Source of the DNA: Aplysia californica
Lineage: Eukaryota
DNA: 64,000 bases
Direction of reading: 5' to 3'
Assembly: GCF_000002075.1 (NCBI RefSeq)
Contig: NW_004797425.1
Span: 994,145-1,058,144 of the forward strand
In this document: piece after piece, positions 4,757 through 64,000 of the stretch
How the letters are laid out: every line of letters begins with the position of its first letter
Numbering within the stretch: the first letter of the stretch is position 1
Notes under the pieces: model-generated
What the model saw: only the letters and a program-made list of their open reading frames with translations
Told to the model about the DNA's origin: nothing
The model's database searches: none
Program-made: the position numbers and the translations under genes

Positions 4757-4758
<2 letters not shown>

Positions 4759-4840
<82 letters not shown>
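4759..4840. repeat. (GT)n microsatellite
   Basis: About 41 perfect GT units. Confidence 0.98.
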
Positions 4841-4845
<5 letters not shown>

Positions 4846-5763: not shown

Positions 5764-5795
5764 ATGGACGATTACGACCCTGCATGCCCTACAGA
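5764..5795 (+). CDS. SETD2: SETD2 first coding exon (MDDYDPACPTE)
   Basis: ATG GAC GAT TAC GAC CCT GCA TGC CCT ACA GA|gtaaga, phase 2. Resembles the vertebrate SETD2 N-terminal motif MGDFYDPEHPTPE (recalled). Confidence 0.8.
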
Positions 5796-6593
5796 GTAAG
5801 AATTTTGTTCTTTTTCTGTGTTCTTAACTTAATTGCTAATTGGTCTACATCTAGGATAGTGTGTAGACTGTTGGTTTGAAGTGCTTTTCGATGAACACTA
5901 CTGGGAGGCATTTCTTCAGGCAAACATTATAAATTGCCATGGCTAGATCTAGATCTCTTGATTCTAGATCTAGGCCTACACATGATACATGATGGCCGTG
6001 GTCCATGATTCCAATTCTATGACTCCATAGTAAGGTACAGGTAAGGTTTGGCCAAAGTCAAGGAAATGGACTCTTTAAAAATAGGCAGGCACTATTTGCA
6101 ACGCCGCATTCTGAATAGCTCACGTGCTATGCCTATTTGAAACGCTGCGTTCTGATCGTAGATCTAGCTCCTATGCTGTTTGAAATGCCGCGTTCTGAAT
6201 AGCTCCCATGCTATTTGAAACGGCAGTACTAACATCAAGAATTTTAGATCTAGATCTAGTAACATCGTTTCTAACATATAATAATGTTGTAGTTCTGCCT
6301 GAATTGTGGAAACTTTCAGTTTCTTCATGAACTTCATAGGATTTGACTCATTTTTTTATGACACTATCTTATTCCAATCAATATTGGGTTGATCTAAATC
6401 TAGATCTAGATCCTCTAGGTCTCAAATTGTTTCAGACATTGTTTGCACAAAATTAGTTCATCTCTCATAATAATTATTATAATCTTTTGAGTTTGAGCAA
6501 GTAGATCTAAGTCAAAAGACGCTTGGATAACAATTTAAAACAAGACGATGCAGCTCGGTAAGCACTATTTCCTTTCTGCAGTGTCATCATACA

Positions 6594-33678: not shown

Positions 33679-34111
33679 ACAGGTGTAACAACCTATAAAG
33701 ATGAATGATATAACCTGCAGAGAAGGGCACAGTTTTAGTGTTTTGCTGAAAGGCACTGATGTAGAGAGTGAACTTGAAACCAGATACTAGAAATCCTATG
33801 CTTTGGCTTGCCAGCTGGCACCTTTGTTGTTCAAGTATTTTAATGAAAAATTCCTTTCCTTGAAGTTTTTTTCTCTAAGCATTGTGAATTCAAACATAAA
33901 GAGCTATTTTGGTGTCAGAAAAGGGAAAAGTGGTACATTTTTCTGCTGTAACAACTGTCTACCATATCAAAGTTGGTGACTGAAGATATATTGTAACCAT
34001 TTGATGTCTATTGCATCAGTGAATCATTTTCATCATAACATACTAATGAGGGAACAAGTGAACAAAGCCAGTTTGGCCTGTTACTAATGAACAATGATGC
34101 AATTTCTTCAG

Positions 34112-37100
34112 ATTCTGAAAGAGATGCTCCAGTGTTGGAACCAGAAGCCGAACATGCACAGAGACTGGATGATGATGTGTCTCAAGGACCCCCTGATCTT
34201 CCAGTGGAGCCCACACATCCTCAGAGGACAACCAGATCATCGTCATCGTCTTCTGTGTCTTTAACGCCATCAACGCCTGCTTCTGCACCAGGCGCTCTGC
34301 AATTTAAGCTGAAAACAGACCCAAATAGTGGCAAGTCTAAAGTGTCTTTCCAGCTGAGAAGGAGCCTCCGCAATAATGCCCTGAAAGTGGCTGATGATGA
34401 GGACAATGAGGAAGAGGCGAAAATCGCTGAGGATAATGCCAAAGGTCCTGGAGAGGCCGTAGAAGTTTTGGAGAAAAAGGCGGCAGATGAATACGTACCC
34501 ACGAGATTCAAGGTTGCCAAGAAGCATGACATGTTTCGGCCGGACATAGTGCCTACCAATGTGACGGTTGTTTTCAGCTCGGCTGGTATAGGTGGTGGTG
34601 GGCCGATCGTTGAACCAAGTAGTCCAGCACCTAGACTTGTCCCTCAGCCCCCTGCTCCAACTGGGGCAGAACTACCTACCTCAGACGATTCAGGTCACAA
34701 GCCCCTTGGTGCTCTTGTAAATGCTGGAGAAGAGGTCAAGACATCAGAGAAAATTGATGGAGACACGAGAGGAAAGGGAGGAGATGAGAAAGAGACAAGC
34801 TCTGTTACTGTCAAGGAAGGTCAGGAAGTTACAGATAGGGAGAGTGCTGGGCAGGATAGTAGAACTGATCAAGATTTGTCCCGTGATGAGCGCCGAAGCA
34901 AAAGGTCAGATACAAGGAAAGATTTGGAAAGGGGGAGTAGCAAGGAAGACAAAGCTGACTCTCCTTCTCAGCACAATACGAGGCAAAGAAAGAGAGAAGA
35001 GAAAAGTGAAAAGAAAAAGTCCGACCGAGATGATGATGATGGAAGAAGAAAACGCAGGGAAAGTAGAGACAGGGAGGAGGAGGAGAGACCCCGGAGGCAG
35101 TCAACAAGATCTTCGTCGAGGTACAAGAAAGATGTAAGTGATGATGAAAGCAAAGATTATGATAAATACAGCGGTAAGAATCGGCGTTCTAACAGACAGA
35201 GCAAGAGAGATAAAGAAGAGGATGAGGACAGGGTTGATAGTGACACAGTGCAGAGGTCTTCTAGAAGACGGCAGGAGGATTCTCCAAAGCGCTCTCGGTC
35301 TCGAGGTAGCCGGAGGCAGAGCAAAAGTCCTAGTCGAGAACGAAAGCGCAAAAGTGTCAGCCCAGTTCATGACAGGGTTTCAAGGAAATCAGAAAGTGGG
35401 AGGGGTGGATCAAGAAAATCTAGTCCTGGCGGTCGCCGAAGAAGTGACAGTAGTGATGGAAGTGAAGAGAAAGAAAAATCTGAGAGGAAAGAAGATACTG
35501 TAGATGAATCGGGTGACGGTAAAAGTGAGAAGCAAGTCAAAAAGATTGTTCTTCAAAGGTCCCGAAATTCAGGTGATTTTGTAGTAGCTGAAAGCAAGCT
35601 TGGGGAAAATGAGGATAGCAGAAGTAAAGTTGACAAAAAGGAGGATGATGGCCAGACTCCTTCTGAAGAGGTAAAGGCTGGTGATAAAAAGGAGGAAGGC
35701 TTTAAAAAAAATGTGGAGGAGGAGGAGGAAGTCTCAGAAAGGAAAAAAGGAAGCAGTAAAATGTCTTCTCCGAATGATAAAGATTCTCATGAAAGTATTG
35801 CTCAGGCTCAAGACCAGGTGAGAGTGAAACAACAGAAAGAACTACCTGCAGAGGAAAGTAAAATGGTTGACAAAGCATGTTCTGATAAAAAGGACAAAAA
35901 ACTGCATAGAAGAGACAAAACAAAAAGGCACTCATCCTCAACTGAAGAAGAGGAAGACAACGAGGAGTCAAAACGACGTTCTCTTAGAGGTCAGGCTCGA
36001 GGCGAGAAGAAAGAATTGGAGAAAGTAAAACATAAGAACTCTCCAGAGGAAAGAAAAGAAGGAAATGATTTAGTTACTGATAAAAAGGGGGGGAAAATGG
36101 GGGAAAAGTCAAAATCAAGACACGACTCTTCTTCTTCATCAGAGGAAGAGAATGTCTCCAGAGAGTCAAAACGTCTTTCACTTAGAAGTCAGTCTCGTGA
36201 TGGGGAAAAGGAACGTGAGAAAATGGGAAGAAGGAGAGAAAAGTCACCTGTAGAAGGTAAAGCGATGAATGATGCAGTTGTTGATGAAAAGGAAAGAAAA
36301 CTTAAGAAGAAAGACAAAGCAAAAAGAAGGTCATCTTCCTCTGAGGAAGAGAAAGATGATGGAGGGTCAAAAGCACATTCACGGAAAAGTCGACACAGAG
36401 AAGAGGTATCCCCTGAGCAGGTCCCCGAAAAGGCAAGTGCAAGCAGACAAGGTTCTTGTGCTGATGTGGACATGAGAGATGATAACGGGGGTGGTTCTGA
36501 GGCTAGAGTTGTTCCAGAATCTGAAGGAAAGCCCTCCCATCAGCTGATCCCCAAGCAGGTGTTTGAGCCGGCGCTTCCACCAGAGCAGGTCTTGGTTGAT
36601 GTTTCCGCCCTTCCTGGCAAGAGTAAATGGGAGCTTGATGAGGAAGAAGAGGAACAGCAGAGGCTGGGAGGTGGGAGGAGGTCAAGATTTCATGATGCGT
36701 CTGAGTATGTTGAGCCTGTGCGGAGGTTTGAACGAGTTGTTGCACCTGTCGAGGTTGAACGTAGCTCCCGTTCAGGCGGGATGGAGTGGGGGGGTCGCGT
36801 GGGTGGGATGCGAGTGGGTAAAGTGCGAGAGAGCAGTAGCAATGAGGAGGAGGTAACTCATGAGCTGAAGAAACAGAAAGAGAAGAAAAAGCACAAGGTA
36901 AAGAGCAAGTCGGAGAAGAAAGCAAAGAAGAAGAAAAAGAAGCAGGAGGAAAGTGGGGAGGAGTCTCAGAAAAACCTCGAAGGTGATAAAGAGATGGTGC
37001 AAGATACTGAAGAGAGAGAAGAGCAAGAGAAAATGGAGGAAAGCAAAAGTCTTGAAGTCAAGAGTGAGACCAAGGAGATCAGTGAAGAGGAAAAAGTTCA

Positions 37101-40100
37101 TTCGGTCAAGAAATCTGGAGGAACAAGTAAGATAGTGGATTATCTGAAGGGTTATAGTGAAAAAATGGTGACAGATGCCTCACAAGAGGAGAAGCCAGAG
37201 AGTGTGCCTGAAACTGAGGTTGATTCCAAAGCCAAAGAAAAAATAGAAGTAGATGAGAAGACAGATGTTGAGAAGTTAAAGACAGAAGAAGAGAAAGTAT
37301 TTAATTCACCTAGTCCAAGTGAAGTGGAGGGTGATAAAAAAGAGATTCCCTCCGTAGATAAACAGCAAGATTCAAATATTTTGTTGCCTCCTAATAAAAA
37401 AGTAGATAGAGAAACTGAGGAAAAAGACCAAGTAGAATGTTCAACTGACAATGCTGTTATTATCGGCACAGAGGTCTCAGATGAGAAGCCACATGTTGAG
37501 CAAAAAGCAGAGAACAATCAGGAAGCTGAGGTGAATGATATAATTGTTGATGTTGGGGTTGATTCAGGCTTAAGTGGAGATAAAACCAACCTTACTGAAA
37601 AAGAAGGTTCGATTGTTAAGGCAAAGGAATTGCACTCTAAAACCAGAGTTGAAGAATTAGTACAGAAGGAAAGGGTGAGATCTCTTTCAAAAGATCGGAG
37701 TGAACGATCAGACTCAAAATCTTCTCAGAGAAGCAGAGAAAGGCGAGAGAGGTCGAAGTCATCAGACAGGTCAAAGTCTTCAGAAAAATCAAAAAGGAGT
37801 AATAGGGCCAAGTCACGGTCAAAGTCACTGTCTCCTGGACGATCAAGACGTGGGAACCGAGAAAAGTCTCGATCATTCTCCCCGCAACGTTCAAAGAAAA
37901 GTAAGAGAGGACAATCAAGGTCTCCAGAGAGGCGGAAAAGGAGCAACAGAGAGAAGTCACGGTCAAAGTCTGTAGAGCGTTCAAAAAGAAGTAACAGGGA
38001 AAGATCCAGGTCCCCATCAGAGACTAAGAGAGTCTCCAAGAGATCTCAGTCTAAATCTCCTAAGAGAAGTGGGCGTGATCGGAGAGATAGGTCAAGGTCT
38101 CTATCCTCAGATCGGCGGAGACGTAACAGGAGGTGGCGATCCAGGTCGCGATCAAATGAAAGATATCGTAAGCAAAGAAGTCCAGATATCTACGGCAGAC
38201 GGGACAGAGACAGGTACAGAAGGGATCGCTCCAACTCTGGTGAGAGGCGTCGCCGTAGATGGGGCAGTGAAAGTGATGAGAGGGAAAGTTCTCGCTCCGT
38301 GCGAAATCGCAGACAAAGGAGTACTTCGCGAGACTCTGATGTGCAGGAAATTGGTTCTCAGCCTGGTATATTAGAAAAGGGGAAGGCAAGCAAAGAAACA
38401 ATTGTTGTGGAGGATGATGAGGATCAAGTGAGTGCCATTGACATTGCTTCCATACCTATACCTGGAGAAATTCCTTTGCCTGGTGAGACATCTGTAGACA
38501 CAAAGAGTAAGGAAGTTCAGCAATCTTCTGCGCCAAATGATGGTCTTGTAGATAACCTCGAAGATGCCCCTATGGATATTTCAGATGAAGAGGAAAGATG
38601 CGAAGATGTTAAGGAAAAGAACGAAGGCTCTGTCATCATTAGGCCTGAAAACGAGCAGGAAAAAGATATAGCCAACAAAAGTTCAGCCGTGAGCTTGGCT
38701 GTGAAGACACCTACTAATGTTTCACAGGTGGAGAAACGTTCAAACTTGGCTGTTAATCCCTCTGGAAAAGAGAGACAGATCAAATTTTCCTTTTTTGGAA
38801 GCAGTAAGAAACTGAAGCCTGTGGTTGCCACAAGTATACTGGATGATGATGACAGTGTGGTGGAGAAGAAATCAGCCATTAGTCTACTGGATGTAGAAGA
38901 GACCAAACAAACCTCAGAGAGCCGTGTATGTGTTGTGGAGCAGGAAAATGTGGCCAAAGCTGCAGACAATCCAAATAATAGTAACTTGGAAAATAATCTA
39001 AAGAACGTAGAAAAATCAGCTGCTGTGAAGGAGGGTTTTGATGAGCCAGAGGTGGTTTCAAAGAATTTAACATCAAAGACAATTGATGAGGAAAGTAGTG
39101 CCACGAAGGAAAAAGTGTATTTAGAGGCCAGTGGAGTACCAGACCTTCTCGTGTCCAAATCTGAGGCTAAGACAAATTTATCTGTTCCGTTGGAGGATCT
39201 CTGCCAGCCACAGGAAGAGGATACGGAGGAGGTTAGCTTGTTAAGTGATCATGAAGATTCCAAGGTGCCAAACTCTTCCGACATGAAAACTGAAGAAGCT
39301 GTTAAGGAAGAGGACTCCCCACCCAAGAAGCTGAAGTTCAAGTATGTTCCATTGTGGGAGATGGAGGGTGAGAACAAAAAACCCCAGGCTTTGCTTGAGG
39401 AGGAGGAGAAACTAAAAAAGTCCAAACACCCTCTTGGGCTGGCTTTGGATTATGACAGTGAAAGCTCTGATGAGGAGGGTCAGAAAGAGGGAGAGAAGAT
39501 GTCAGCATCTCTTCTCCAGAATACTGCTAGTAATGAGAAGACGCGAGAAACGCCAAGTGGGACTGATGATGTGAGGTCCACAGAGATGCAAGGCAAGGCA
39601 GATACAGGAGTGCTGAAAGAAAGATATGGCAAAACAGATGCAGTGATAGTAGAGATAAAAGAAAGTAGAACTGTAAAAGAAGTGAAAGGACATGTTTTAG
39701 AAGAGGCAAAATTAACTGAAACAACAGTCACCACTCAGATGGGGATGGGGGAAAAAGATGTTGGCATGAAGAGAGAAATGCACAAAGACGTAGAAATGAA
39801 AGATGATATTTTAAAGGACCAATGTATAGATGCAGAAAAAGATAGTTCTTTGAGTGTTGATGTGAAAGACAATGTACATGTGAATGTGAAATTAGATAAA
39901 AGTAGTAAAGAAGGAGAGGAAGAATGTGTAGCCCTTGATAGGGGAAATGAACCTTATTCACCATCTCAGTCAGATGTAGAGGAGCCGTATTCACCTTCCT
40001 TTCCTTCCATGGAAGATTTAGATGGTACTGGTCCAAGTATAGAGCATAAACCATTGAAGTTTGCCCCAGGACAAGAGGACAAAGAGGAAAAGGGACACAC

Positions 40101-43100
40101 TCCATTGTCAAGTGATGTACAGGTCTCTACTGCAGCTCTTTTACAACAAGCTGTGAAAACTGCTGGATTGTCTAGTGCATCGGTATTAGGTGGTCCATCT
40201 GCTTTGCTACAAGGGGTAGCTGGTGTGTTCCCACCAGTGATAGGGACTGGCTCTGCAGGGCTGCAGACATTCCCACAGCCCGTGGCTCCAGTGATGTTCC
40301 CATTGACAGGTGTCCCGAAACCTGTCCCCCCTCCAGCTGTCCGTGGGATAGCCCCATTGATGGGGCAGACTCCAGCCCCAGTGCCCCCTCCACTCGTTGT
40401 TGGGGGAGTTCAAGTTCCAGGCCAGGTGCCTGCCCCAAGTTCTATAGGGATCCAGACCCCAGGCCTTGTGCCCCCTCCGGTCGTCCCGGTTCCAGCCCCA
40501 GGGGTTAAGTTCTCAGGTGTGGGAACTATTCCAGCGTCCACCGTTCCCCAGCCTGTGCCTCCCCCTCTCCTGCAGTCTGCAGTGACTGTAGCCCCAGGTG
40601 TGCCAAGCCTTCCTGTTGGATCTCAAAGCACTGGGTTGTTGAGCACTTCTGAACCAGTCAACTGGGGTGCTCAGGCAGCCTCAGTTCCTCCACCTGGTCA
40701 GCCCATCGGTGCTGCTGTAGTACCAGCTCCCCCATCAGTATCGGCAGTTTCTGATCTTATTCCTACTACCCAAGGACAGGTGACAGGTGTAAGCCCTGCT
40801 GTGATCCAGTCAATGGGCACAACATCTGCACCAGCTGCTGCCGCCCCAGTCAGGTTCCGCGTGTCTCGCTTCCATCAGGGTCCTGCTGCTGGGGTCACGG
40901 GAGTGGTTGTGCCGCCACCCACTGTGTCTGTTCCCAGCCTGCACACCCCAGCCACTGTCCCCCCTGTATGGGGAGGGCCTGGCATGGTCAGCATTGACAC
41001 TCCATCAGTGACGACGGGAGATACCTCTACAGTATCAAAGTCACAGCAGAGCTTAGTCTCAACCAAGTCTGCTGTGGTACCATTGAAACCAGCAGTCAGT
41101 ATCTCAACTGGTAGTAAGCGGCCTAAGTTCACATCTATTCTGTCTCAGCCCAAGATTGAAGACCCATCAGTTCTTCAGTCACTGGGAATAAAGCCTGCTG
41201 TGAAGACGCTGTCTAAAGAAGTAATAAGTAATCCACAAGGCAAGACTGTAGAGGTTACAAGCACATCCACAGAGAGGTTGAGTGCTATTTTGAAGGAACA
41301 GTCTCTGTCGCTTTCTGAGGACTGTAAAAAAGACAGCCCTGATATTGCCACACTAAGTGGGGTACCTGTTGAACCGTTCCAGATAAAGTCTGGGCTTGTT
41401 GATGAAATCAGAACTGTGGAGAAAGATCCAAAGAAGTCTAGTGACTCCTTGAAAGATATGAACACTGAGAGTCATACTATAGACGAGAAAACAGAGCTGT
41501 CAACCACTAAAGACGAGGGTACAGCTCGTGATGGTGGAAAAGTTTTGAATGTTCCAAAACCAGGCCTAGTGCTCACCATTAACCAGGTGGAGAGACAGGC
41601 AGAGGTGATGGAAGCCTCATCTACTCTCTATGACATTGACACTGACAGTATACCATTGCCAGGTGTCGAAGCAAAGCCACCAATGACTCAGACCCCTGCT
41701 CCCCCTGCCCCCTCAGGGAATATATTAACTGAGCAACTGTCACAACCTCCACTCCCGGTGCAGCCGGCTGTTACTTCTGCCCCACCCTTACCCGAAAGCC
41801 CAGCTCCACCACCACCTGTCCAACCACCTCTTCCGGCCCCAGAGGAGGATGTGACTCTTTCTTCTACGGCAGCAAAGAGTCAAACGCCAAACACTGCAGA
41901 AAAGAATAAAAAAGTTTATCAGTCCCCTTTGGCCATAGGTTTGCTACCGAAGGTGACAAGCATTCAGTCACCTTTGTCCATTGGCCCATTACCAACGGTC
42001 CCACCAGAGCGTCCGGCCTCTCAGTTGTCCTTTCCATTAAAACAGAAACTGTCTCAAATCAGTTTTGGTAACAAGATGAAAAAAAGTTCTGGGGACAAAG
42101 ATGAAGATATGAAAGGCAACCAAAGTCAACAGGGCTCCTCCGCTTCTAAAATTCACATAGTGCTGAAGAGCAAGTCAGCTGTACAGAAAACTGTGGTTCC
42201 AGGCTTTGAAGATGAAGGCAGTGATGATGGGTCAGCTGGTGACACGCTGGCTGATATATTTTCAGATGGGGAGACACTTCAGAAAACTAACAGAGAGGAA
42301 GAGCAGGAGCAGCTTTTATCTTCTGATCATGCTGCAAGGGCGTCCGAGGTTGAAGTGTCAACAGGTGCTGTCTCTAGAAGTAAAGTAGATGAGACTGCTT
42401 TCTTGTTGGATTCGTTGCATAGTGTGAGTGGTTCAGCAGAAGCATCTTCTGGAACTGAGGTAAACAGTCATGGGTCAAAAGGTACTACAGTAGTTGATGT
42501 GGAGGCTTTCCCAGTGCAGGTGATCACAAGCTCTAGGAAACAGGAAGAAAGCTCAAGTACTGCTTGGCCAGAGTTCACTGCTGGGGAGAGCAAAGGGAAG
42601 GAAGCCGTACCAGAGAAAGAGACTGCAGACAGGGATGACTCCAGGGACAGCAAAGAGAGGTCGCGAGATCGTCACAGGAACAGGGATGATAGCCGAGATG
42701 ATGGGAGAAAGAGAGGTGATGATAAAGATCGTAGGAGGGCTGACGATAAGAAAAAGAAGTACAATGATGGAGATGACAATGATGAAGAGCAGAGAAGTAG
42801 CAGGAGAGGTGATGTTGCAGAGGAGGAGAGAGGACTAGTGAAAATAAAGAAAGAAAAGGATGATGGGTCATACTATGGTAAAAAGCGAAGAGAAGATGAA
42901 AAAGGTGACAGCTATTCAGAGAAGAAGTCCGAAAGAAGAAGGGGAGATGATGAAGACTACAGTCGAACAAGAAGACGAAAAAGAAATGATGAAGAGGATT
43001 ATGATGATAAGTCTGGTAGAGGAAGGGAGGAGGATAGCAGAAGAAAAAGTCGTGAGAACAGGGATGACGACAGAAAGAGGAGGCGTTATGATGAAGATGA

Positions 43101-43313
43101 GGAAGATTCTCGTAGGGGTCGCCGCTTTGAACGTGACAGAAGTCGTGAACGGGACAGGAGCCGTGAAAGATCAGGACGGGGTGATCGTGATCGCAGCCGT
43201 GAGAGGGATCGTGGCAGCAAGTCTAGCCGCGGTGGCTTAAAACGAAGTCGACGATCAAGAGAAAGAAGCCGCAGCTCCAGCCCACCCCGCAAGAGAGAAC
43301 GCAGCTGGGACAG
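34112..43313 (+). CDS. SETD2: SETD2 giant exon (9,202 nt; RS-rich, charged, Pro-rich disordered N-terminal region)
   Basis: 3,076-aa uninterrupted ORF. TACTAAT branch site at 34082 and acceptor tttcttcag| (phase 1). Donor AG|gtgaga (phase 2) is in frame with the next exon. Confidence 0.9.
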
Positions 43314-44128
43314 GTGAGAGGAGTGTTTTTGTTATTTCAACTTTAGTTGTCTGTATTTCAACTCAGTTGTCTTTTTTCATGTTCTTTCACTTCCATCTCG
43401 TTATTGCTCTATTTTTTCTTGCACTTTACCTTTTTTTGCTTTTGTTAGGTAGTGATTTAATAAAATCTTGCTATTTGAACAATTCTGTGATCATGGGTGG
43501 TTGGCGGGTGCTCTGATATGGTTTGTTCCTTCTCTCCTATCAAACATCTATAGTTCTTCTCTCTCCTTATTTGTTACTGTCTTGAACTTACATGACGTAA
43601 TTGTGTTACAAGTGTAGTAAAACTTTTACTTAAAACGAATCTGTGATCTGAACTTCTGTGTACAAATCTGTGTTCTGAACTACTGCATTGATTATATGAT
43701 ATTTCAAAAACTGAACTGAACTACCCATGAAATAATTCTGTCCTTGAGGCTCCCTGATTTATAGGGGAGGGGGGGGGGGATTACTTACAGGCTCAGCTTT
43801 CAAATTTAAAAAAAAATTAATGTTATGCAAATTGCATGTCCCTGTTACAAATTGCATAAATAAGGCATGTTACCATGTTTCAAGCAGATATGCTTAGCTT
43901 TGAGAACCGATAATTGAATTAATGTGACATAGATATCTTGTCGTTGCTCCGACTTTTCCAATTTTCATGGATACACATTTTGGTACGGATGACTTTTTCC
44001 TGTTGACTGTTGCAGTGAAGGGGCATTTCTACAGGCTGCTTTATTTTTAGTCTTCTACCTATGTCTGATTTTGAGCCTTTGAGCCTTGTTGATGTTAAGT
44101 TAAACTTTTTTAATTTGAACTTTTGCAG

Positions 44129-48555: not shown

Positions 48556-48762
48556 TTCTGAAATTCACAATAGATGTTGATCAGCATGATCTTTTCAGAA
48601 AATTGGGAGTTTGTTTTGTTCTGTGATACAGGCAGGTTACTGATAGTGTATGAAGTAATAGTTAAAGGTTTATGTGCTACCTGGACAAGTGTTACTAAAT
48701 GGCGTTCTAGACACTAAGGTTCTGTCTTTACTCATTGTATGTACACTGCATTTTGCTCACAG

Positions 48763-48882
48763 GAAAAGGTCAAAGAGTATGAAGAGAATGCAATGCGACT
48801 GCACAACATCACGAGAAGACCGAGCCATGGGCATTGAACCCTGTGGCTCTGACTGTCTGAATAGAATGCTCATGATAGAGTG
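48763..48882 (+). CDS. SETD2: SETD2 exon, AWS domain
   Basis: cacag|G AAA AGG...GAG TG|gtaagt; MQCDCTTS...CGSDCLNRMLMIE. Confidence 0.96.
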
Positions 48883-49312
48883 GTAAGTCATATCTTTTAG
48901 TAAAAACGATTTCTGTATAGTACTAGCATAGGTCATGTCACAAGTAGAAAGTGCTGGTAAATTTCGTATAAATTTAAATGAAACTGGGCTTCTTTTTTCT
49001 GTGGATCAAGTTCTTCCCATACAAGGAGATGTAGTGTAAGTTATAAGAATGCCAGTTTGAAGATGTGTAAAATTGAGATGTTTTCGGAATAATGTAACTT
49101 GGTGTTGCGTTTTTACTTTTTTAAAATACTGTACTTCAGTTAGGGGGATAATTCTTGAAATGTGATGACAGAACATTTTATATTTATTTATTTTCTCACT
49201 TCGTGACCGAAAGATACATCTCTTTGTCTCAGAAATGCGTCTAAGGTTCAAATTCATGCATGAATGTGAAACTGCCATTGTCAGTTGAATGTCATGTATT
49301 CTCTATCTACAG

Positions 49313-49364
49313 TGGATCACGCTGTCCTTGTGGGGACTATTGCACAAATAAAAGGTTTCAGAAG
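49313..49364 (+). CDS. SETD2: SETD2 exon, AWS end (CGSRCPCGDYCTNKRFQK)
   Basis: ctacag|T GGA...CAG AAG|gttagt; 52 nt; phase 2 to 0. Confidence 0.95.
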
Positions 49365-49584
49365 GTTAGTATTCGTTTTACTGGTTTTGTGTGTATTCAC
49401 TTTTTAAGAATTGCTTGTGGAGTTTATTCTGGTTGAAATATAGGTATTTTTTAAATGTTGTAATCATCTGCTTTTAATTACGAACTTTTCATTTGTCACT
49501 GTTTCAAGGATAATTGGTATTCCCAGGTGCTGTGGTTTTTTAAAATGTAAATACTGTGCATCTGTTCTTTTGTCAAAGCAGACA

Positions 49585-50592
49585 GGGGGCCCTCGTTGTC
49601 TATAGGTTAAGGTGTTCGCCTCTCATTCAATGGGTCCCAGGTTCGAATCCGGATAGCAACGGAAAATTTTATTCTCCAAAATTTTCTCCTTTCACCTCTT
49701 TTCCTGCTCTCCAACAATGTTCTATCGTCTATTTTCGTCTCCACTATCAACCCCCACCTCCTCACCTTTTTTTCCCCCGGTGTCCTGATGGTACAGATAT
49801 TTGGTCGCTTTTAAGCACAAGGGGGCTATCCCGAAAAATGCTGTTTTGAGAAAATCGAAGGTAAAGTTTTTGCCCCTTGTACAATTTCTTTAAAAGACAA
49901 GGAGAGTTTTCTTTATAACCGGACAAATATACACACCAATGAGACCAAACTTCTCCTATAGGTAGGGCAATGCCCACTTCTGGTGTTGGTCAAAATTTCT
50001 GGAAACCCCAAAAATCTAGGTTGGCCCACTTGTCCTTAAAAGCGACCATTTGTAGGTTACGTAAAAATGTGTTGAAATGGTGCAAATTGTTATGTTTCAA
50101 GGAGAACAAAACAAGAAAAACAACGAGAAAAAGTGGAATTGTTTAGTCGATGATGATGAGATGATGGTAACAATGATCATGCTGTAATGCAGGAAATGAT
50201 GTGCATGTTATTCTTAAAGTTAGTGTTAAGTCCCACCCCCTCACTCCTCTGCCCCCTCCTTTGGGCTCCTGATTCTTTCTGCAGTCTTTCTACTGCTACT
50301 CCTTGGCTCCTTACTGCTGTATGTCAGCCACACCCCTGATCTTATGGTAGGTAAGATCTACATGTAGCCTTCTCAGATTAGGGCGAAAAATCGTGGAGTT
50401 CCCATGTGCAAGTTGTGCACGTTAAAGATCACTTGGTGGTCCAAAGTCTATAATAGTAGGCTTCGGCCGCCACCCAGTAAAAATTCAAAATTTCCTACCA
50501 TGTGAAATTGTTTGATGTGTCCCGCGTGTTCATATGACCTTATCATACTTATGCAGTTGCAAGCACCGTAAAATACTTACCAAAAAAAAAAA
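49585..50592 (+). mobile_element. SINE family B split by a ~465-bp insertion
   Basis: tRNA head (GGTTCGAATCC) to ~49765; body resumes at ~50232 and ends with tail plus poly-A. Confidence 0.78.
49800..50051. mobile_element. MITE with ~30-bp TIR (superfamily unassigned) inside SINE B
   Basis: TGGTCGCTTTTAAGCACAAGGGGGC vs reverse complement TGGTCGCTTTTAAGGACAAGTGGGC. Confidence 0.7.
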
Positions 50593-50779
50593 AGCATCCG
50601 GCTCTTCAGAGTGGTAAAGTTTGGCCTAATTTGTAGTCAATTAGAGTTTAGTTTTTGTATTGTCATGACTGTAAAAACAACATTGCCAATGTAGCACAGA
50701 TTGATATTGGTTCCCCAATTTTTTTAAAGAATGTGTTTTGATTATCATTATTGTCTCCTTTCTAACTTGCTTTACCCCC

Positions 50780-51165
50780 CGTGGCAGTGCCACTGACTGT
50801 AGTGTCTTTAGGCCATTCCCAAAGGGGGGACATTTTTCGTTTAGGCACAGTAGAATTGTAAATGGGCTGATTCATGTCACGCTCATAACTGTGCCTGATC
50901 TACAACAGGGAACTGCTGCTTTTTCTTTCTTAATCCTTACTATTGTCATTTCCTCTACTTTTTTTGTATGTTTGTCACTCTCTTGTGACTTGCTATTTCC
51001 GGGGTGCCTTGATAGTCGAAGCAGACCTTGTGCTGTTGAAGCTAGAGAGGTGAGCAGAATAAGTCTGATTCCCTGTAAAGACTTCTCTGTTGACACCCAC
51101 CCCTTGGAGCTCATATGACCGTATGCAGTTGTGAGCGCCGTAAAACCCTCTACTATAAAAAAAAA
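50780..51165 (+). mobile_element. I/Nimb-like LINE 3' UTR fragment
   Basis: Second copy of the 27690-28080 element; contains a GGCACAGT...ACTGTGCC hairpin. Confidence 0.7.
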
Positions 51166-51200
51166 ATAACTTGCTTTCCTTGTGAAATTTTCATTTTCAG

Positions 51201-51280
51201 AAACAGTATTCAAATGCTTTGCCTTTCAAGGCAGGGGATAAAGGTTGGGGACTGAGAGCTGAAGAAGATTTCTCTGAGAA
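51201..51280 (+). CDS. SETD2: SETD2 exon, SET start (KQYSNALPFKAGDKGWGLRAEEDFSE)
   Basis: ttttcag|AAA...GAG AA|gtaagt; GWGLRA motif. Confidence 0.95.
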
Positions 51281-51442
51281 GTAAGTGTTAGAAATATACC
51301 TTCTAGTATTGCAATGTTATTTCAGTATAGTTTCTTATACATCTGCTCATGGTAGATATTGCAGGGGTTCCCCTGGTTTTGCATCTTCTGCCTTTTTGTG
51401 CATATTTGTTGTTTTTAAAAAATCTCAACACCTTACTGTTAA

Positions 51443-52133
51443 CTCTTTTCCTCCCAGGCCAAAATCCACCACTGGCCCAGGGCTTTTCCCTGACCTATTT
51501 TTACACCCCTACCCTATGAAAAGAAAATATCGAACAAACATCCAACTAAACACACACAGACCATATCACATGGCCCATCAAACTGAAGGTTAAAAAATAA
51601 TCTATCAGATGGTGGTACAATATTGAAGATTTATTCCAATTATATTAGTTTGAGGTTTCTAAAATTGATTATGCGATATCTAAGGTGTTGTATGAAATCG
51701 ACAATTTTCCAGCTTTGAAAGGTCATAACTAAAAAAAGTACAACAATAGCATCATTCAAACTTCCCAGGTATGTTGCCTCAAATAATGCAAAAAAATGCT
51801 GAAAGTTATGTATGTGTGCCTATTATAGAAGTGAAAATATGAGACATAGAATCTATACTGAAGTCAGGGGAGCACTTTTCTTTTCATTTTTATGTTTCGA
51901 AGGGGACAGAAAAAAGCGCTGTAATGACTAAAAATCGTCTGTCAGTGCTACATTTTCTTTCATGTCCCCTAACAGGAAGTCTCTTCTATTATTTCGAAAA
52001 CATGGATCGCCCGAGAATTTCGTGCTTTTTATTTAGTGGATTGGAATAGATGGCGAGCAGCTCGAGACGTATTTTGCGGCTGTCGGTCCAGCGAGGCCAC
52101 ATATGCGAGCTGCAAAATGTGGTAGGAAAAGTG
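51443..52133. mobile_element. piggyBac-type MITE
   Basis: TTAA|CTCTTTTCCTCC ... GGTAGGAAAAGTG|TTAA. Confidence 0.65.
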
Positions 52134-52324
52134 TTAAGGGATATGTATTCTAGAGAGCAATTAAAGAAATTTGTTTTCATTGTCTTAGTTGTTTTTCTAT
52201 TGTGGGTCCAGTGTTTGGAACACGTAGCTCATGTGTTTAGTACTTGTTAAGGATAAGAGTCAAGGCATAGCAATATGCTCTTATGAGATGGGTTTTTAAA
52301 TTGTCTTCTTTAATCTTCTTCCAG

Positions 52325-52526
52325 GGGCACATTCATCATGGAGTATGTTGGTGAGTTGCTGGGCTATGAAGAGTTTGTGCGTCGCACACGTCAGTATGCC
52401 AAGACAAACCTCATCCACCACTACTTCATGGCACTGAACGCCGACGAGGTCGTGGATGCCACACTCAAAGGCAGCATATCACGCTTCATCAACCACAGCT
52501 GTGATCCCAACTGTGAGACTCAGAAG
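52325..52526 (+). CDS. SETD2: SETD2 exon, SET core
   Basis: ttccag|G GGC ACA...CAG AAG|gttggt; FIMEYVGE...RFINHSCDPNCETQK. Confidence 0.97.
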
Positions 52527-52624
52527 GTTGGTTTTGTTGATTTTTTTTTAATAGTCTAAGTCAATAATCAAAGCAGAAATAAATTGTTCAAGTTTCAACT
52601 TTAAAAAAAAACAATACCTATTAA

Positions 52625-53376
52625 CTCATTCGCTGCATATTATTTTGGGCTTGTGGACGAAATTTTTTCCGGAGGACGAAATGAAATGATGACTAGTGCG
52701 CTTTTCAAAGGCCTTTGGGGCCACAAATTCAAATAAATATCAACATATTATATACTAAAATTTTCAGTATGATTTGTAAAACACATCTGAAATGTTTTTT
52801 TGTGTATTTTTAGACTTTGGTTCCTGTAATAGACGATTATGCAACAGAATTTTGCTTGGATGGGGATAAAATTTGAAATAAAAAGTTAATAATCTTTGGT
52901 GAAACTCACAAAATATGTTTACACCTTGTCAAATGATACATCAAAATAACCATAAATGAATAGAACTGGAAAGTATTGAAAAATATGTAGTTATTTACAT
53001 ACATTCTACAAAATTTGTACTTTTGGATCGTAACATATTGATATTGAAAATTTTTTTTACAATCTTGAAAAAAGACAAGATACTTTCACAAAGAGAAAAA
53101 AATACTAGTATCTTATATGGAATATAATCTTGAAAAAAGGACAAGATGCTTTCACAAAGAGAAAAAAACACTAGTATCTTATATGGAATATAATCTTGAA
53201 AAAAGGACAAGATGCTTTCACAAAGAAAAAAAACACTAGTATCTTATATGGAATATAATCTTGAAAAAAGGACAAGATGCTTTCACAAAGAGAAAAAAAC
53301 ACTAGTATCTTATATGGAATATAATCTTGAAAAAAGGACAAGATCCTTTCACAAAGAGAAAAAAGCTGTGAATGAG
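52625..53376. mobile_element. piggyBac-type MITE carrying a ~65-bp minisatellite (53061-53364, ~4.6 copies)
   Basis: TTAA|CTCATTCGCTGC ... GCTGTGAATGAG|TTAA; unit AATCTTGAAAAAAGGACAAGATGCTTTCACAAAGAG...CTAGTATCTTATATGGAATAT. Confidence 0.78.
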
Positions 53377-53677
53377 TTAAGTACAATCTTACTAGTCTAC
53401 AAAAGGTGTTTTAACCTTGTGATCTCTTCATTGTCTGTGGTAATACAGAGAGTGAGTTGAGTGAAGCCTCCTTCTGCGCACATGTTTGGCACATGCCACC
53501 ACTCAATGGAACTGGCCAATTCATCTCATATTCTAAGGGGGTATCTTATGTAAGACTTCTCTTTGTAAATTATGATTATTAGACTTATTTCTTGTTTCAT
53601 CTGTGTACTTTATGTTTGAAGGGATTTCATGAGTGTGGCTTTCATTTGAATTTTATGATGCTGTTCTTGATTCACAG

Positions 53678-53775
53678 TGGACTGTCAATGGGGAACTTCG
53701 AGTTGGTTTCTTCACCCGTAAAGAGATCAAGGAAGGAGAAGAGCTGACATTTGACTACCAGTTTGAGCACTATGG
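53678..53775 (+). CDS. SETD2: SETD2 exon, SET end (WTVNGELRVGFF...ELTFDYQFEHYG)
   Basis: cacag|TGG...TAT GG|gtacgt; 98 nt. Confidence 0.97.
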
Positions 53776-54353
53776 GTACGTGGTAACAATGGTTGAGAGA
53801 GAGTCCCATTTTGTCTGTTTATAATCCTCCTAGTGCTGCAAGAGAAATGTTGCAAGTGTACTTTGAATAGTGCATAGAGACTTTGCAGCAGCAAAACTTT
53901 GGCAGTTCACATTTTCTAACCTCTCAAGACATATATGTAGTCCTTTGGCAAAAGAACACTATATGTGAAGTTTATCTTCAGTTTGTGACATGGAATAAAA
54001 TCTGACTGGTTTTCTTTGTCACAATCTCAGTAATAAGTAGAGCAAAATAACTTTTTGCCTTGATTCCACCATGTTCTTTTGTTATCATTTTTTTCATGGG
54101 ATCAAGCTTGGCTGTTTTTATCCTTTTATTTTATGAAATTATATGTCAGAGTATTGTCTTGTTCTTTTTTAAAAACTAAAGACATCTCCTTTGAATTATT
54201 TTTTGGGTGACATTTGAAGGGTTCAGGGGTAAATGTGGGTGATTTATGATTCTTACAAAATGTATGGAGGCTTTGCTTTTGTTTTTGCTAAGTTAACAAG
54301 GTTGAGAGAGATATTCATCTATGTGTCTTTCTTTTTCAAATTTGAAATGGCAG

Positions 54354-54477
54354 AGAGCCCCAGAAGTGTTACTGTGGATCAGAAAATTGTAGAGGGTATA
54401 TCGGACTTGTGAAGTCTACATCGAAAACGAATAAGAAGAAGGACAAGAAGAAGAAGGAGATATTCAAAGATGAACTG
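54354..54477 (+). CDS. SETD2: SETD2 exon, post-SET (EPQKCYCGSENCRGYIG...)
   Basis: ggcag|A GAG CCC...GAA CTG|gtgagt; CxCxxxxC zinc motif. Confidence 0.95.
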
Positions 54478-55041
54478 GTGAGTGACTTGTTCCAATGTAA
54501 TTTGAATATTAGCCTTGAGATGATTAATTCCTTATTGCTGAAGTGGGAACAACTGGTAACCTCTCTTTTATTCTTCTTCTTTTAATGATCTCAATTGTTT
54601 TTGCTTTTCTCCAATGCTTTTTCAATATTGGTTTGAATATGTATTTGGCATAAACTGTTGTGCTAGCTTAATTAAGACTATAAATATAATGAGCAACTCG
54701 CATCTGTCTTAGTGTACACCTGCATTTATGTAGATGTAGATGAGAGCAAGGAGAATTTGTATGAATTCAAATGAGAGGTCACTGATGTAAATGTGAGTCT
54801 AGAATTCATGTGGGGTTTTTTTACAGTCAGTAGTAGGCTTCTACAAAGTACCGCGGATTGAACCCCTTTTATTTGCATTGTACAACTCGTTATTGGAAAC
54901 AAGTGATTTTGGAATTATACAGGTAATGTTATGGTTCTTTTGTTCACTACAGTTCTGGGAGTTAGGGTTTTAACTTTTGATTGTTAGCTTTAATAGCTAA
55001 AAGTTCATGATTGTTACCTTTCTTGTTTCTGTGACAAACAG

Positions 55042-62095: not shown

Positions 62096-62168
62096 ATCCA
62101 TTTGCCAAGTGGAAGAAGTCGACTGCTCGATTTTCACACAGGAAAAGATCCATAGAGGAGGATGACAG
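62096..62168 (+). CDS. SETD2: SETD2 exon (DPFAKWKKSTARFSHRKRSIEEDDR)
   Basis: ccacag|AT CCA...GAC AG|gtaagt; phase 1 to 2, which bridges the flanking exons. Confidence 0.85.
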
Positions 62169-62712: not shown

Positions 62713-63553
62713 GAAAGTCAAAGAGCCTCGACTGAGCAAAGCTGAACGGCGACAGCGGTTTGAGGCTCAAGTGAAGGCTCAGGATGAGTTGGCTGCCCAG
62801 GCCTATGCGGAGGAGCAGGAGCGTCAGAGGGAGGCCTACATAGTGCACACCACCCGGCTCATGCAGGACCCAGACTACTTCCGCTTCCACCAGCAGCAGC
62901 AGGAGATGGGGTTCGAACCCAGGATGGACCCCGCCACTGGCCAGCCCCTGCCCTTAGGTCATGATGTCTTTATAGATCCCAACACAGGGCAGCCTATGAT
63001 TGACCCGGCTACGGGCCAGCCTCTAGCGGTGGATCCCAGTACAGGCCAGCCCTATGTAGACCCCAGCACGGGACAGCCATACATAGACCCCAACACTGGT
63101 CAACCCTTTTTGGATCCAAACTCTGGACAACATGTGATAGATCCGAACACTGGACAGCCTTTAATTGACCCCAACACTGGTCATCCCTACATAGACCCGA
63201 GTTCAGGTCAGCATTTAGTAGATCCAAACACAGGGCAGCCGTACTTTGACCCAAATACTGGCCAGCCGGTGATAGATCCAAACACGGGTCAACCGCTGAT
63301 AGATCCCAGTACAGGCCAGCCTTTGCTACAGCACCCCTCTCAGATAGACCCAGCCACTGGTCAGCCTGTCTTAAGCCATGCCGTGGACCCCCACAGTGGG
63401 CAGCTGATGCCGCACTATGACCCTCACACAGGCACTCACATAGATCCCCACACTGGACAGCCTGTGCCGGCGGGTGCTCACACTCAAGTGGATCCGCACA
63501 CAGGCCTGCCACTGCCAGGGTTGGGTCTAACTGCCCCGGATTTTCCTGCTCAG
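62713..63553 (+). CDS. SETD2: SETD2 exon (LSKAERRQRFEAQV coiled coil plus DPxTGQP repeat array)
   Basis: cctcag|G AAA GTC...GCT CAG|gtgggt; the start matches vertebrate LSTEERRKLFEQEV (recalled). Confidence 0.9.
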
Positions 63554-64000
63554 GTGGGTAGAGTCATATAGAACTCAGTTTTTGTTGGCTGTGCAAGTAC
63601 TTTTTCTTGAGAAATATAACTCTCTTTAGCGTCTTTCTCTCTCTTTCTCTTCTCCTCTCTCCTCCTTCTCTCTCCTCTCTCTCTCTCTATCCGTCTCTAT
63701 CCCCCTCTATCTCTCTCTCTGGCGTCTCCTTTCTCTGCTATTGTTTCCTTTCCTTTCTACCCTTCTTACACATTCACACATATTGTCTGTATCCCAGTTC
63801 CCTATAAAAATATCTTCAAGAATCACTCTTCCAAACAACTTAAGTTTTGAAAGATATGCACACTGGTGTCATGGTATTATGGACGTCGACTGTTGTCCTT
63901 TTGGTTGTTGCTGCTACCAGCCATCTTAACAGGTGGGTGGTTGGCGGGTGCTCTGGTGTAGTTTGCTTCTTCTTTCCTATGAAACATCTGTCGTCCTTAT

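What the first reader, a model, noticed from the sequence alone, without database searches (positions are those of the whole stretch)
62924..63514. 19-copy [hydrophobic]-D-P-x-T-G-Q-P peptide array inserted in SETD2 at the position of the hnRNP-interaction (SHI) segment
Seen: after the LSKAERRQRFE coiled coil the exon encodes 19 DPx(T/S)G motifs, 13 of them in near-perfect 9-aa register (IDPNTGQPM, VDPSTGQPY, IDPNTGQPF...). Codons vary synonymously between units (all four Gly codons, GAT/GAC, ACA/ACG/ACT), which points to selection on the peptide rather than recent DNA slippage. Known (recalled): human SETD2 has its hnRNP L-binding SHI segment here, with a single YVDPS(N)P stretch. DPxxG turns build beta-hairpin meanders in OCRE domains (RBM5/RBM10), which bind spliceosomal Sm tails. 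Inference: a lineage-specific, multivalent beta-hairpin module coupling H3K36 methylation to RNA processing. I know of no such array described in SETD2.
Basis: partly seen in the sequence, partly recalled or inferred. Interest (0 to 1): 0.75.

Follow-up and report, generated by a model that had tools for sequence, protein, structure and literature searches.

The report
Amplified SHI-region motif array in sea-slug SETD2
In this sea slug and its snail relatives, the chromatin enzyme SETD2 carries 11-19 tandem copies of a short peptide at the spot where the human enzyme has a single similar motif that docks a splicing factor, so these animals may have turned one docking site into many.

Summary
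Exon 62713-63553 (+) encodes a coiled-coil helix followed by 19 DPxxG motifs. Thirteen of them form hydrophobic-DPxTGQP-hydrophobic units in a 9-residue register.

The gene is the SETD2 orthologue of a heterobranch gastropod. Earlier notes of this scan call the genome Aplysia californica. A spliced transcript contig contains the whole exon.

The units are old and under peptide-level selection: synonymous sites are saturated (pS 0.82) while pN is 0.18.

Arrays of 11-13 strict units (11-14 DPxxG/S motifs) sit at the same place in three named pond-snail SETD2 proteins. Five unnamed relatives also carry them. Twenty other named animals have 0-1 copy.

The array lies exactly where vertebrates have the SHI peptide (YVDPSNPNAGKVLLPTP, PDB 7EVR chain B). 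It contains YVDPS strings and one GQPLLQHP Leu-Leu unit. I therefore read it as an amplification of the resident SHI-region motif, not a foreign insertion.

The OCRE-like fold is not supported. The period is wrong, there are no aromatic triplets, the Pfam score is generic to DPxTG arrays, and AlphaFold confidence is low.

The hnRNP L orthologue keeps 6 of 6 SETD2-binding pocket residues. Multivalent docking of RRM proteins is my preferred mechanism, but it is inferred. No description of the array was found in print.

The parts
62096..62168 (+). Upstream coding exon (...DPFAKWKKSTARFSHRKRSIEEDD, last codon split AG|G)
   Evidence: A contig of run X4 lies on L006 94-166 and continues directly at 711 (L006 x = window 61999+x). 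The boundary is ambiguous by 3 nt (CAG on both sides). I placed it at the canonical AG...GT read.
62713..63553 (+). 841-nt coding exon: coiled coil plus the repeat array. Its length is not a multiple of 3, so skipping it would shift the frame.
   Evidence: open frame, AG/GT borders. One search shows the X4 contig piece at L006 711-1551 with 0 other letters, joined on both sides to the neighbouring exons.
62738..62905 (+). Coiled-coil helices (exon residues 9-64), conserved in all SETD2 orthologues (ERRQxFEAQVKA...)
   Evidence: AlphaFold2 helices 9-51 and 53-64, with block-mean pLDDT 83-96 over residues 11-60 and 60 for block 61-70. Invariant columns in alignment A1. Orthologue strings.
62924..63514 (+). 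The 19-motif [hydrophobic]-DPx(T/S)G array (residues 71-267)
   Evidence: positions and spacings; shuffle control.
62972..63328 (+). Core of 13 units (I/V/L/F)-D-P-(N/S/A)-(T/S)-G-Q-P-(L/Y/V/F/M) in 9-residue register
   Evidence: nucleotide identity 0.674, pS 0.819, pN 0.175, and no dependence on distance between units.
63299..63343 (+). Unit IDPSTGQPLLQHPSQ. It holds the only Leu-Leu pair followed by Pro, sits at the first break of register, and is the candidate orthologue of the vertebrate SHI contact core (NAGKVLLPTP).
   Evidence: LL scan. PMC8575775 passages. Comparison strings (NAGLLTP in Batillaria, GLLPTP in Anneissia, GKVLLPTP in vertebrates).
48662..54582 (+). Context: AWS, SET and post-SET exons of the same gene. 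The open frames containing them are 48662-48883, 52314-52556, 53633-53821 and 54346-54582.
   Evidence: Pfam AWS, SET and SET again. The post-SET string EPQKCYCGSENCRGYIG was read.
34087..43317 (+). Context: giant 3076-codon exon of the same gene
   Evidence: Its best named relatives are SETD2 proteins of Bulinus, Physella, Lymnaea and Biomphalaria.

Best explanation
SHOWN. The array is a real, expressed part of the SETD2 orthologue of a heterobranch gastropod. It is maintained by purifying selection on the peptide. It lies at the place of the vertebrate SHI (SETD2-hnRNP interaction) segment.

INFERRED, fairly strong. It arose by tandem amplification of the motif already resident there (hydrophobic-DP-x-T/A-G..., followed in the ancestral form by Leu-Leu-x-Pro). 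It was not inserted as a foreign module.

INFERRED, weaker. The array works as a flexible, largely disordered string of Asx-Pro/Gly turns. Each turn is flanked by a pair of hydrophobic residues. Together they offer many copies of an SHI-like short linear motif to the dorsal pocket of RRM domains (hnRNP L first of all) or to another reader of the YVDPS half of SHI. This would raise the avidity with which the H3K36 methyltransferase, riding on RNA polymerase II through its SRI domain, recruits splicing regulators.
For: Exon, splicing and gene identity.

Selection: 78 unit pairs give pS 0.819 (saturated) against pN 0.175. D, P and G are each invariant in 13 of 13 units, and both flanking positions are hydrophobic in 13 of 13.

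Conservation:
- 11, 13 and 13 strict units at the same place in Bulinus, Physella and Lymnaea SETD2.
- Arrays also in unnamed fragments P0001 (12 motifs, with WW and SRI confirmed by Pfam), P0012, P0025, P0275 and P0281.
- Of 20 other named taxa, 17 have 0 strict units and 3 have 1.

Resident-motif origin:
- A profile of the 19 Aplysia units has its top hit on the single unit in the same linker in Mytilus (two species), Saccostrea, Lineus and Owenia.
- The crystallised human SHI peptide is YPPGYPMQAYVDPSNPNAGKVLLPTP.
- Aplysia has QPYVDPSTGQPY twice and GQPLLQHP once. Lymnaea has IDPNTGQPLLQ four times, plus one IDPNTGQQFLQ variant.
- The caenogastropod Batillaria has a vertebrate-like LDPNMPFNAGLLTP.
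- Local alignment of the SHI 26-mer to the exon scores 41, reached by 163 of 5000 shuffles.

Partner present: an hnRNP L orthologue lies at G000:C555. Its RRM2 best matches 7evr_A, and 6 of 6 pocket residues named in PMC8575775 (V210, I214, L251, I256, Y257, L263) are kept.

Disorder: AlphaFold2 block-mean pLDDT is 35-58 over the array (residues 71-280) and 35-73 over the array in P0001. The helix, WW and SRI are confident in the same models. The human SHI is also described as disordered (PMC7933334 passages).
Against: - No binding was or could be tested here.
- Only one Aplysia unit has Leu-Leu. Bulinus has none, while Lymnaea has four. If Leu-Leu is essential, as in human, most units cannot bind the same way.
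- The unit profile did not pick out the vertebrate SHI. Its top hit was near the SHI in 0 of the 21 vertebrate proteins that gave any domain, and many gave none.
- The alignment p of about 0.03 is modest, and the repetitive target inflates it.
- Oysters carry KVLLPTPP upstream of the coiled coil and the DPNTG unit downstream. The two halves of SHI may therefore be separate motifs with separate partners.
- Period and copy number differ between species (9, 11, 13 residues), and other lineages have quite different DP repeats at this place. That also fits a mutation-prone linker.
- The two raw polyA RNA runs gave 0 reads on the exon. They gave almost none on the whole gene, so they are uninformative rather than contrary.
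Confidence: 0.45

Rival explanations
1. Tolerated low-complexity linker. The DP-rich segment between the coiled coil and WW is mutation-prone (replication slippage, unequal exchange). It is kept only as a soluble, flexible, acidic spacer or weak condensate-forming region, with no specific partner. The conserved DPxTG merely keeps it turn-rich and unaggregated.
For: - Copy number and period vary between species: 19 motifs at period 9 in Aplysia, 11 in Lymnaea, about 13 in Physella.
- Lymnaea has runs of identical units, suggesting recent duplication.
- Other lineages expanded different DP repeats at the same place: DPNxYQ in Octopus and Argonauta, DPNY in the chiton, MDPSQG in Lineus.
- DP density in this linker exceeds the rest of the protein in 21 of 23 named taxa.
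- AlphaFold2 confidence is low.
- The array's 210 residues contain no K, R, E, W or C.
Against: - Synonymous sites are saturated between units while six of nine positions are nearly invariant. A mere spacer would not need an exact DPxTGQP plus two hydrophobic residues.
- The same core is kept across heterobranch lineages.
- It resembles a motif with a demonstrated partner in human (PMC8575775).
Confidence: 0.3
2. The array binds a partner other than hnRNP L through the DPxTG half. This could be a reader of the N-terminal YVDPS half of SHI, or an intramolecular contact that tunes the neighbouring polyPro-WW autoinhibition or the SRI domain.
For: - The amplified and invariant part is the DPxTGQP half, not Leu-Leu.
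- Oysters separate KVLLPTPP from the DPNTG unit.
- In the human complex the N-terminal half does not touch the RRM, yet is needed for full binding (PMC8575775 passages).
- pLDDT rises to block means of 53-73 in P0001 residues 201-250, where the units are tightest.
Against: No candidate reader is known. The P0001 model gave pLDDT below 50 over most of the array and no confident fold there. I did not inspect contacts between the array and WW or SRI.
Confidence: 0.15
3. One reading: an OCRE-like beta-hairpin meander that binds proline-rich Sm tails.
For: - Pfam OCRE PF17780 scores 33.4 bits for the whole exon product, above the 24.7-bit cut-off.
- DPxTG is the turn motif of OCRE repeats. A true OCRE exon of this genome reads YVYDASSGFYYHPATGYYWDP.
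- The models show isolated beta-bridges flanking each turn.
Against: - 0 single stretches pass, and the genome-wide OCRE scan finds two other exons but not this one.
- Orthologous arrays P0001 and P0025 do not score at E<=0.01, whereas unrelated bacterial DPxTG arrays do (89, 31.6 and 25 bits).
- OCRE is defined by five octamer repeats with aromatic triplets and six strands bearing tyrosine surfaces (PMC5127646 passages). Here the period is 9-13, the 13 units hold 7 aromatic residues in all, and a Pro sits in every inter-turn segment.
- The only strands of 3 or more residues in the array are two short ones at residues 234-243.
Confidence: 0.07

Closest known systems
SHI (SETD2-hnRNP interaction) domain of human SETD2, residues 2164-2213, core 2167-2192 (PDB 7EVR chain B)
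   Same: - Same gene and same place (after the coiled coil, before polyPro-WW).
- Same local strings: hydrophobic-V/I-D-P-S, then N/T-A/T-G, then a hydrophobic pair followed by Pro.
- Predicted disordered in both.
- The partner's pocket is conserved in this animal.
   Different: - One copy in vertebrates against 11-19 here.
- The vertebrate unit has a 3-residue SNP insertion and K-V where the snails have Q-P.
- Leu-Leu, essential in human, is present in only one Aplysia unit.
- A profile of the units does not retrieve the vertebrate SHI.
Raver1 PRI motifs binding PTB RRM2
   Same: Leu-Leu short motifs in a disordered region dock on the dorsal face of an RRM. PMC8575775 points out the similarity to SETD2-hnRNP L. 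That Raver1 carries several such motifs is my recollection, not from a call.
   Different: Different consensus. The paper reports that the SETD2 peptide does not bind PTB RRM2. Raver1 motifs are dispersed, not a tight tandem array.
OCRE domain (RBM5/RBM10), Pfam PF17780
   Same: Repeated D-P-x-T-G turns. The whole-protein Pfam score is over the cut-off.
   Different: OCRE has period 8, aromatic triplets and a small globular six-stranded sheet. None of these was found here.
DPxTGxP arrays in unrelated proteins
   Same: The same turn motif in tandem. Examples: amphipod PET/LIM proteins (P0003, P0008), secreted subtilases (P0006, P0010), bacterial secreted proteins (P0018, P0020, P0041, P0104), and the hairpin of plakin repeats (P0011, P0029, P0048). 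In one search, 450 proteins scored at E<=0.001.
   Different: Different host proteins and cell compartments, and different spacers. There is no evidence of common descent. No second such array exists in this genome.

Membership tests
SETD2 / Set2 H3K36 methyltransferase | AWS-SET-post-SET catalytic core | tested here: met
   Pfam SET at 8.2e-13 and 2.1e-5. AWS at 1.3e-3 (19.1 bits, under the 23.3-bit cut-off) on separate exons. Post-SET cysteines read.
SETD2 / Set2 H3K36 methyltransferase | C-terminal WW and SRI domains | tested here: met
   Exons just downstream of the window encode LPPNWKTAKDAEGRIYYYHAYTR / QTQWDMP and the SRI strings. They are spliced to the array exon in one contig. Pfam WW and SRI were confirmed on the orthologous fragment P0001. 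The animal's own WW/SRI exons were not put through Pfam.
SETD2 / Set2 H3K36 methyltransferase | Best relatives are SETD2 orthologues | tested here: met
   Searches return full-length proteins with SET, AWS, WW and SRI from molluscs to vertebrates.
SHI domain of SETD2 | Position between the coiled coil and the polyPro-WW | tested here: met
SHI domain of SETD2 | Sequence likeness to the crystallised peptide YPPGYPMQAYVDPSNPNAGKVLLPTP | tested here: inconclusive
   Local alignment scores 41, reached by 163 of 5000 shuffles. QPYVDPS against QAYVDPS. The unit profile fails on vertebrates, 0 of 21.
SHI domain of SETD2 | Leu-Leu pair followed by Pro (LLPTP-like) | tested here: met
   It occurs once, as GQPLLQHP at residues 201-208 of the exon product. 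The other 18 motifs lack it.
SHI domain of SETD2 | Binds hnRNP L RRM2 | not testable with these tools
   Only the partner's presence and its 6 of 6 conserved pocket residues could be shown.
OCRE domain (PF17780) | Five octamer repeats with aromatic triplets | tested here: not met
   The period is 9. The 13 units contain 5 Y/F at position 9 and 1 F at position 1, with no triplets. Definition from PMC5127646.
OCRE domain (PF17780) | Pfam model match | tested here: inconclusive
   33.4 bits for the whole protein against a cut-off of 24.7, but 0 stretches pass. Not found by the genome scan. Orthologues P0001 and P0025 have no hit, while bacterial arrays do.
OCRE domain (PF17780) | Six-stranded antiparallel sheet | tested here: not met
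   AlphaFold2 with shallow alignments of 7 and 19 rows shows no sheet in the array and low pLDDT. These are low-confidence models, so this is weak evidence.
Plakin (plectin) repeat | A unit of about 38 residues: a hairpin plus two helices | tested here: not met
   The units are 9 residues long with no helices. No plectin family appears among the 10 Pfam families listed for the exon. Plakins match only through DPxTG. The 38-residue definition is recalled.

The most novel reading that the evidence does not exclude
Heterobranch gastropods have turned the single SHI docking motif of SETD2 into a multivalent array of 11-19 units. The part under strongest selection is the YVDPS/DPxTG half, not the Leu-Leu pair. 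That would mean the half of SHI regarded in human as a mere conformational prop is itself a recognition element. It would make these animals a natural valency series for how the H3K36 writer recruits splicing regulators.
Probability: 0.3. Interest if true: 0.65.

Novelty: new variant of a known kind. Interest (0 to 1): 0.5.

Why it matters
SETD2 is the sole H3K36 trimethylase of animals, and its SHI segment is the only mapped direct link to splicing regulators. The authors of the SHI papers left open whether invertebrate Set2 proteins bind the hnRNP L homologue (PMC7933334, discussion passage seen).

This finding gives a lineage in which the SHI-region motif is amplified up to 19-fold under clear peptide-level selection, while the partner's pocket is intact. 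It yields direct tests:
- Does valency matter?
- Is the DPxTG half a binding element of its own?
- Is SETD2-hnRNP L coupling ancestral to bilaterians?

It also cautions that Pfam OCRE scores on DPxTG arrays are not evidence of an OCRE fold.

Tried and rejected
- PDB sequence search with the whole exon product and with the Leu-Leu stretch found nothing relevant. The SHI peptide chain was recovered only with the rat orthologous stretch.
- ESM Atlas gave no usable hit.
- The profile of Aplysia units did not detect the vertebrate SHI. I therefore do not claim demonstrated homology with vertebrates, only position plus pattern and bridging taxa.
- The OCRE reading was rejected.
- A second DPxTGQP array in the genome was looked for and not found. 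The weak hits are other 9-residue repeats.
- Raw polyA runs X22 and X23 gave 0 reads on the array exon, and almost none on the gene, among 2158 and 1954 laid reads. Nearly all of those lie on repeats. The runs were uninformative.
- Run X1 shows a hole over the exon although the index says it holds 0.95 of the words. The tool warns that holes prove nothing.
- The literature search was badly framed: none of its 15 listed papers holds SETD2. I repeated it as (13 papers, none on SETD2 architecture by title or abstract start).
- I did not run fold search, because both models are of low confidence over the array.
- I built no joined (spliced) protein model. Exons were searched apart.
- I saw no figures or supplements. 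Fig. 1a and Supplementary Fig. 7 of PMC8575775 (SHI alignment across species, motif preference) may bear on how far SHI conservation was already charted.
- The species name comes from earlier notes of this scan. My own calls show only that the nearest named relatives are heterobranch snails and that the assembly has 927 Mb in 4332 contigs.

Full report
WHAT IS THERE

Window 62713-63553 (+) is one 841-nt coding exon with AG and GT borders. Its product (280 codons from 62714) starts KVKEPRLSKAERRQRFEAQVKA.... AlphaFold2 models this part as two helices, residues 9-51 and 53-64, with block-mean pLDDT 83-96 over residues 11-60.

From residue 71 on there are 19 DPxxG motifs. Thirteen of them (residues 87-205) are units of the form (I/V/L/F)-D-P-(N/S/A)-(T/S)-G-Q-P-(L/Y/V/F/M). 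Eleven of their 12 spacings are exactly 9 residues. The last six motifs are irregular (spacings 15, 13, 11, 8, 16) and rich in His.

Shuffling residues 71-280 100,000 times gave a mean of 0.44 motifs and at most 5.

THE GENE

Upstream exons in the window give Pfam SET (two exons) and a weak AWS match under Pfam's cut-off. A post-SET cysteine string is also present. There is a 3076-codon exon at 34087-43317.

I fetched the DNA beyond the window's end. It holds the polyPro-WW exons (PPPPSPPTVPVSKLPPNWKTAKDAEGRIYYYHAYTR / QTQWDMP) and the two SRI exons.

The giant exon's best named relatives are SETD2 proteins of the pond snails Bulinus, Physella, Lymnaea and Biomphalaria. So this is the SETD2 orthologue of a heterobranch gastropod. 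Earlier notes of this scan name the genome Aplysia californica. I did not verify the species itself.

EXPRESSION

The run index lists 16 runs from at least six studies that each hold 0.77 of the words of a 1101-nt query. That fraction is what the 841-nt exon alone would give. This reading is an inference for 15 of them.

I laid one of them, X4, together with X1 and two raw polyA RNA runs, on 6000 letters from window 62000 onwards. One X4 contig (3020 nt, depth 11) lies on six pieces that are contiguous in the contig: 94-166, 711-1551, 2148-2321, 3068-3166, 4713-4893 and 5518-6000. These are the upstream exon, the array exon (0 differences), two WW exons and two SRI exons, with all introns removed. 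This shows a mature transcript that contains the whole array in frame with WW and SRI.

The two raw runs gave no read on the array exon. They gave almost none on the gene (a few on the second WW exon only), so they neither support nor contradict. Because 841 is not a multiple of 3, skipping the exon would break the frame (inference).

SELECTION

Among the 13 units, mean nucleotide identity is 0.674. The synonymous proportion of differences is 0.819, beyond saturation. The non-synonymous proportion is 0.175 (78 pairs). Identity does not depend on the distance between units (0.66-0.71 for lags 1-7). So there is no sign of recent slippage or homogenisation.

D, the first P and G are each invariant in 13 of 13 units. 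Q is kept in 12, the second P in 11 and T in 11. Both flanking positions are hydrophobic in 13 of 13. The peptide, not the DNA, is what is kept.

WHO ELSE HAS IT

An exhaustive HMMER search with the exon product found 450 proteins at E<=0.001. Among the 150 listed, four are C-terminal SETD2 fragments from unnamed sources (P0001, P0012, P0025, P0095). P0001 carries the coiled coil, 12 motifs, WW and SRI (Pfam).

The other hits I inspected (20) are unrelated proteins with DPxTG arrays. They include amphipod PET/LIM proteins, subtilases, 4.1-like proteins, plakins and bacterial secreted proteins.

Full-length named SETD2 proteins show arrays at the same place in Bulinus (11 strict units), Physella (13) and Lymnaea (13). 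In Lymnaea, four of the units read IDPNTGQPLLQ and a fifth reads IDPNTGQQFLQ, at period 11. Physella has His-rich spacers and a period of about 13. Two more unnamed heterobranch-like fragments have arrays.

Of 20 other named taxa, 17 have no strict unit and 3 have one: Mytilus, Saccostrea and Lineus. The 20 taxa are two caenogastropods, four bivalves, two cephalopods, a chiton, a nemertean, an annelid, five echinoderms and four vertebrates. By NCBI taxonomy the array-bearing named species are Heterobranchia, and the nearest array-less ones are Caenogastropoda.

RELATION TO SHI

The crystallised human SHI peptide is YPPGYPMQAYVDPSNPNAGKVLLPTP (PDB 7evr_B). According to PMC8575775 (passages):
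- Only NAGKVLLPTP touches hnRNP L RRM2.
- Both leucines are essential.
- The N-terminal half folds back and strengthens binding.

This peptide sits at the same place in the protein as the snail arrays. Aplysia units read QPYVDPSTGQPY (twice), and one unit reads IDPSTGQPLLQHP. Bridging forms exist:
- Batillaria: VLDPNMPFNAGLLTPE.
- Mytilus: YIDPNTGQAIPYEV.
- Lineus: YDPNTGQFIP.
- Crinoid: GLLPTP.
- Sea urchin: GLLPHP.

A profile of the 19 Aplysia units puts its top hit on the single unit in Mytilus (two species), Saccostrea, Lineus and Owenia. In vertebrates it does not find the SHI (0 of 21 proteins that gave any domain). A local alignment of the 26-mer with the exon scores 41, reached by 163 of 5000 shuffles.

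I conclude that the array is most likely an amplification of the motif already resident at the SHI position in lophotrochozoans. Its identity with the vertebrate SHI is probable but not proven.

One complication remains. Oysters have KVLLPTPP before the coiled coil and the DPNTG unit after it. The two halves may therefore be separable motifs.

THE PARTNER

The genome has three hnRNP-L/PTB family loci. The one on contig C555 matches hnRNP L RRM2 of 7EVR best (E 2.4e-13 and 3.4e-8 for two exons). PTB chains match far more weakly.

Using the chain alignment and the paper's residue names (offset 178), V210, I214, L251, I256, Y257 and L263 are all kept.

FOLD

AlphaFold2 on the exon product (7-row alignment) gives block-mean pLDDT 35-58 over the array, with only isolated bridges around each turn. 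On P0001 (19-row alignment) the coiled coil, WW and SRI are confident, while the array has block means of 35-73. The alignments are shallow, so this is weak evidence. It agrees with a flexible turn-rich chain and gives no support to a sheet.

OCRE

Pfam OCRE scores 33.4 bits on the whole product but no stretch passes. A genome-wide scan finds two true OCRE exons and not this one. Orthologous arrays do not score, while bacterial DPxTG arrays score up to 89 bits. OCRE's defining octamer period, aromatic triplets and tyrosine sheet (PMC5127646 passages) are absent. The likeness is confined to the DPxTG turn.

MECHANISM

Shown:
- A selected, expressed tandem array at the SHI position.
- A conserved hnRNP L pocket in the same genome.

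Inferred:
- The units act as multiple short docking motifs, each a hydrophobic pair presented by an Asx-Pro/Gly turn.
- They dock RRM dorsal pockets or another reader of the YVDPS half.
- This increases the avidity of splicing-factor recruitment by polymerase-bound SETD2.

The main rival is a tolerated, mutation-prone acidic linker. The parallel DP-repeat expansions in cephalopods, the chiton and the nemertean fit either view and remain unexplained.

NOVELTY

Searches for SETD2 with Aplysia (4 papers), for the motif strings (3 irrelevant papers), and for SETD2 with mollusc (13 papers) found no description of the array. I judged these by listing only. The SHI papers leave the invertebrate situation open. 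Automatic protein records for the pond-snail orthologues exist, so the sequences are public but undescribed. I class the finding as a new variant of a known kind.

Noticed in passing
P0166 (Saccostrea cucullata) and unnamed oyster-like P0163, P0165; Oyster SETD2 carries KVLLPTPP, identical to the vertebrate SHI Leu-Leu core. It lies just upstream of the coiled coil instead of downstream, while a single YIDPNTG(M/I)PI unit lies downstream. This is either a relocated or a convergent hnRNP-L-type motif.
   Followed up: no
P0167/P0170 (Octopus, Argonauta), P0168 (Liolophura), P0171 (Lineus); Other lophotrochozoan lineages expanded different DP-based repeats in the same coiled-coil-to-WW linker: DPNxxYQ about 12 times in cephalopods, (Q/A)DPNYxxxLQ about 13 times in the chiton, and MDPSQGxM 8 times in the nemertean. 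DP density in the linker is 5-20 times that of the rest of the protein.
   Followed up: partly
G000:C198:731225-731527 (-), locus L016; A 533-codon open frame with RING-like cysteine patterns holds about 12 tandem copies of the 9-residue unit YVDASTSP(L/S/I). It is unrelated to the SETD2 units.
   Followed up: no
window 63850-64000 and about 48.3, 58.8 and 59.4 kb; L006 1801-2200 and 4001-4600: A short interspersed repeat, whose frames read ...GGWLAGALVWFA...FFFP.KHLSSLSPL..., recurs in the introns of the gene. It draws very high read and contig depth in all four runs laid.
   Followed up: no
window 63009-63512 (-): A 167-codon antisense open frame runs through the array. It is a by-product of the repeated codons, and the spliced contig supports the + frame.
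   Followed up: partly
P0003 (Trinorchestia), P0008 (Hyalella); Amphipod PET/LIM-domain proteins carry long arrays of (I/L)DPxTGxP(I/L) between the PET and LIM domains. Their units are very like the snail SETD2 units, in an unrelated protein.
   Followed up: no
window 1531-2118 (+): An open frame with reverse-transcriptase-like strings (a retroelement fragment) lies upstream of the gene.
   Followed up: no
L006 3068-3166 (second WW exon, outside the window): In the raw polyA runs this is the only SETD2 exon with a few reads: 6 and 2 at position 3136. The 841-nt array exon and the 3' exons have none. Too few reads to interpret.
   Followed up: no
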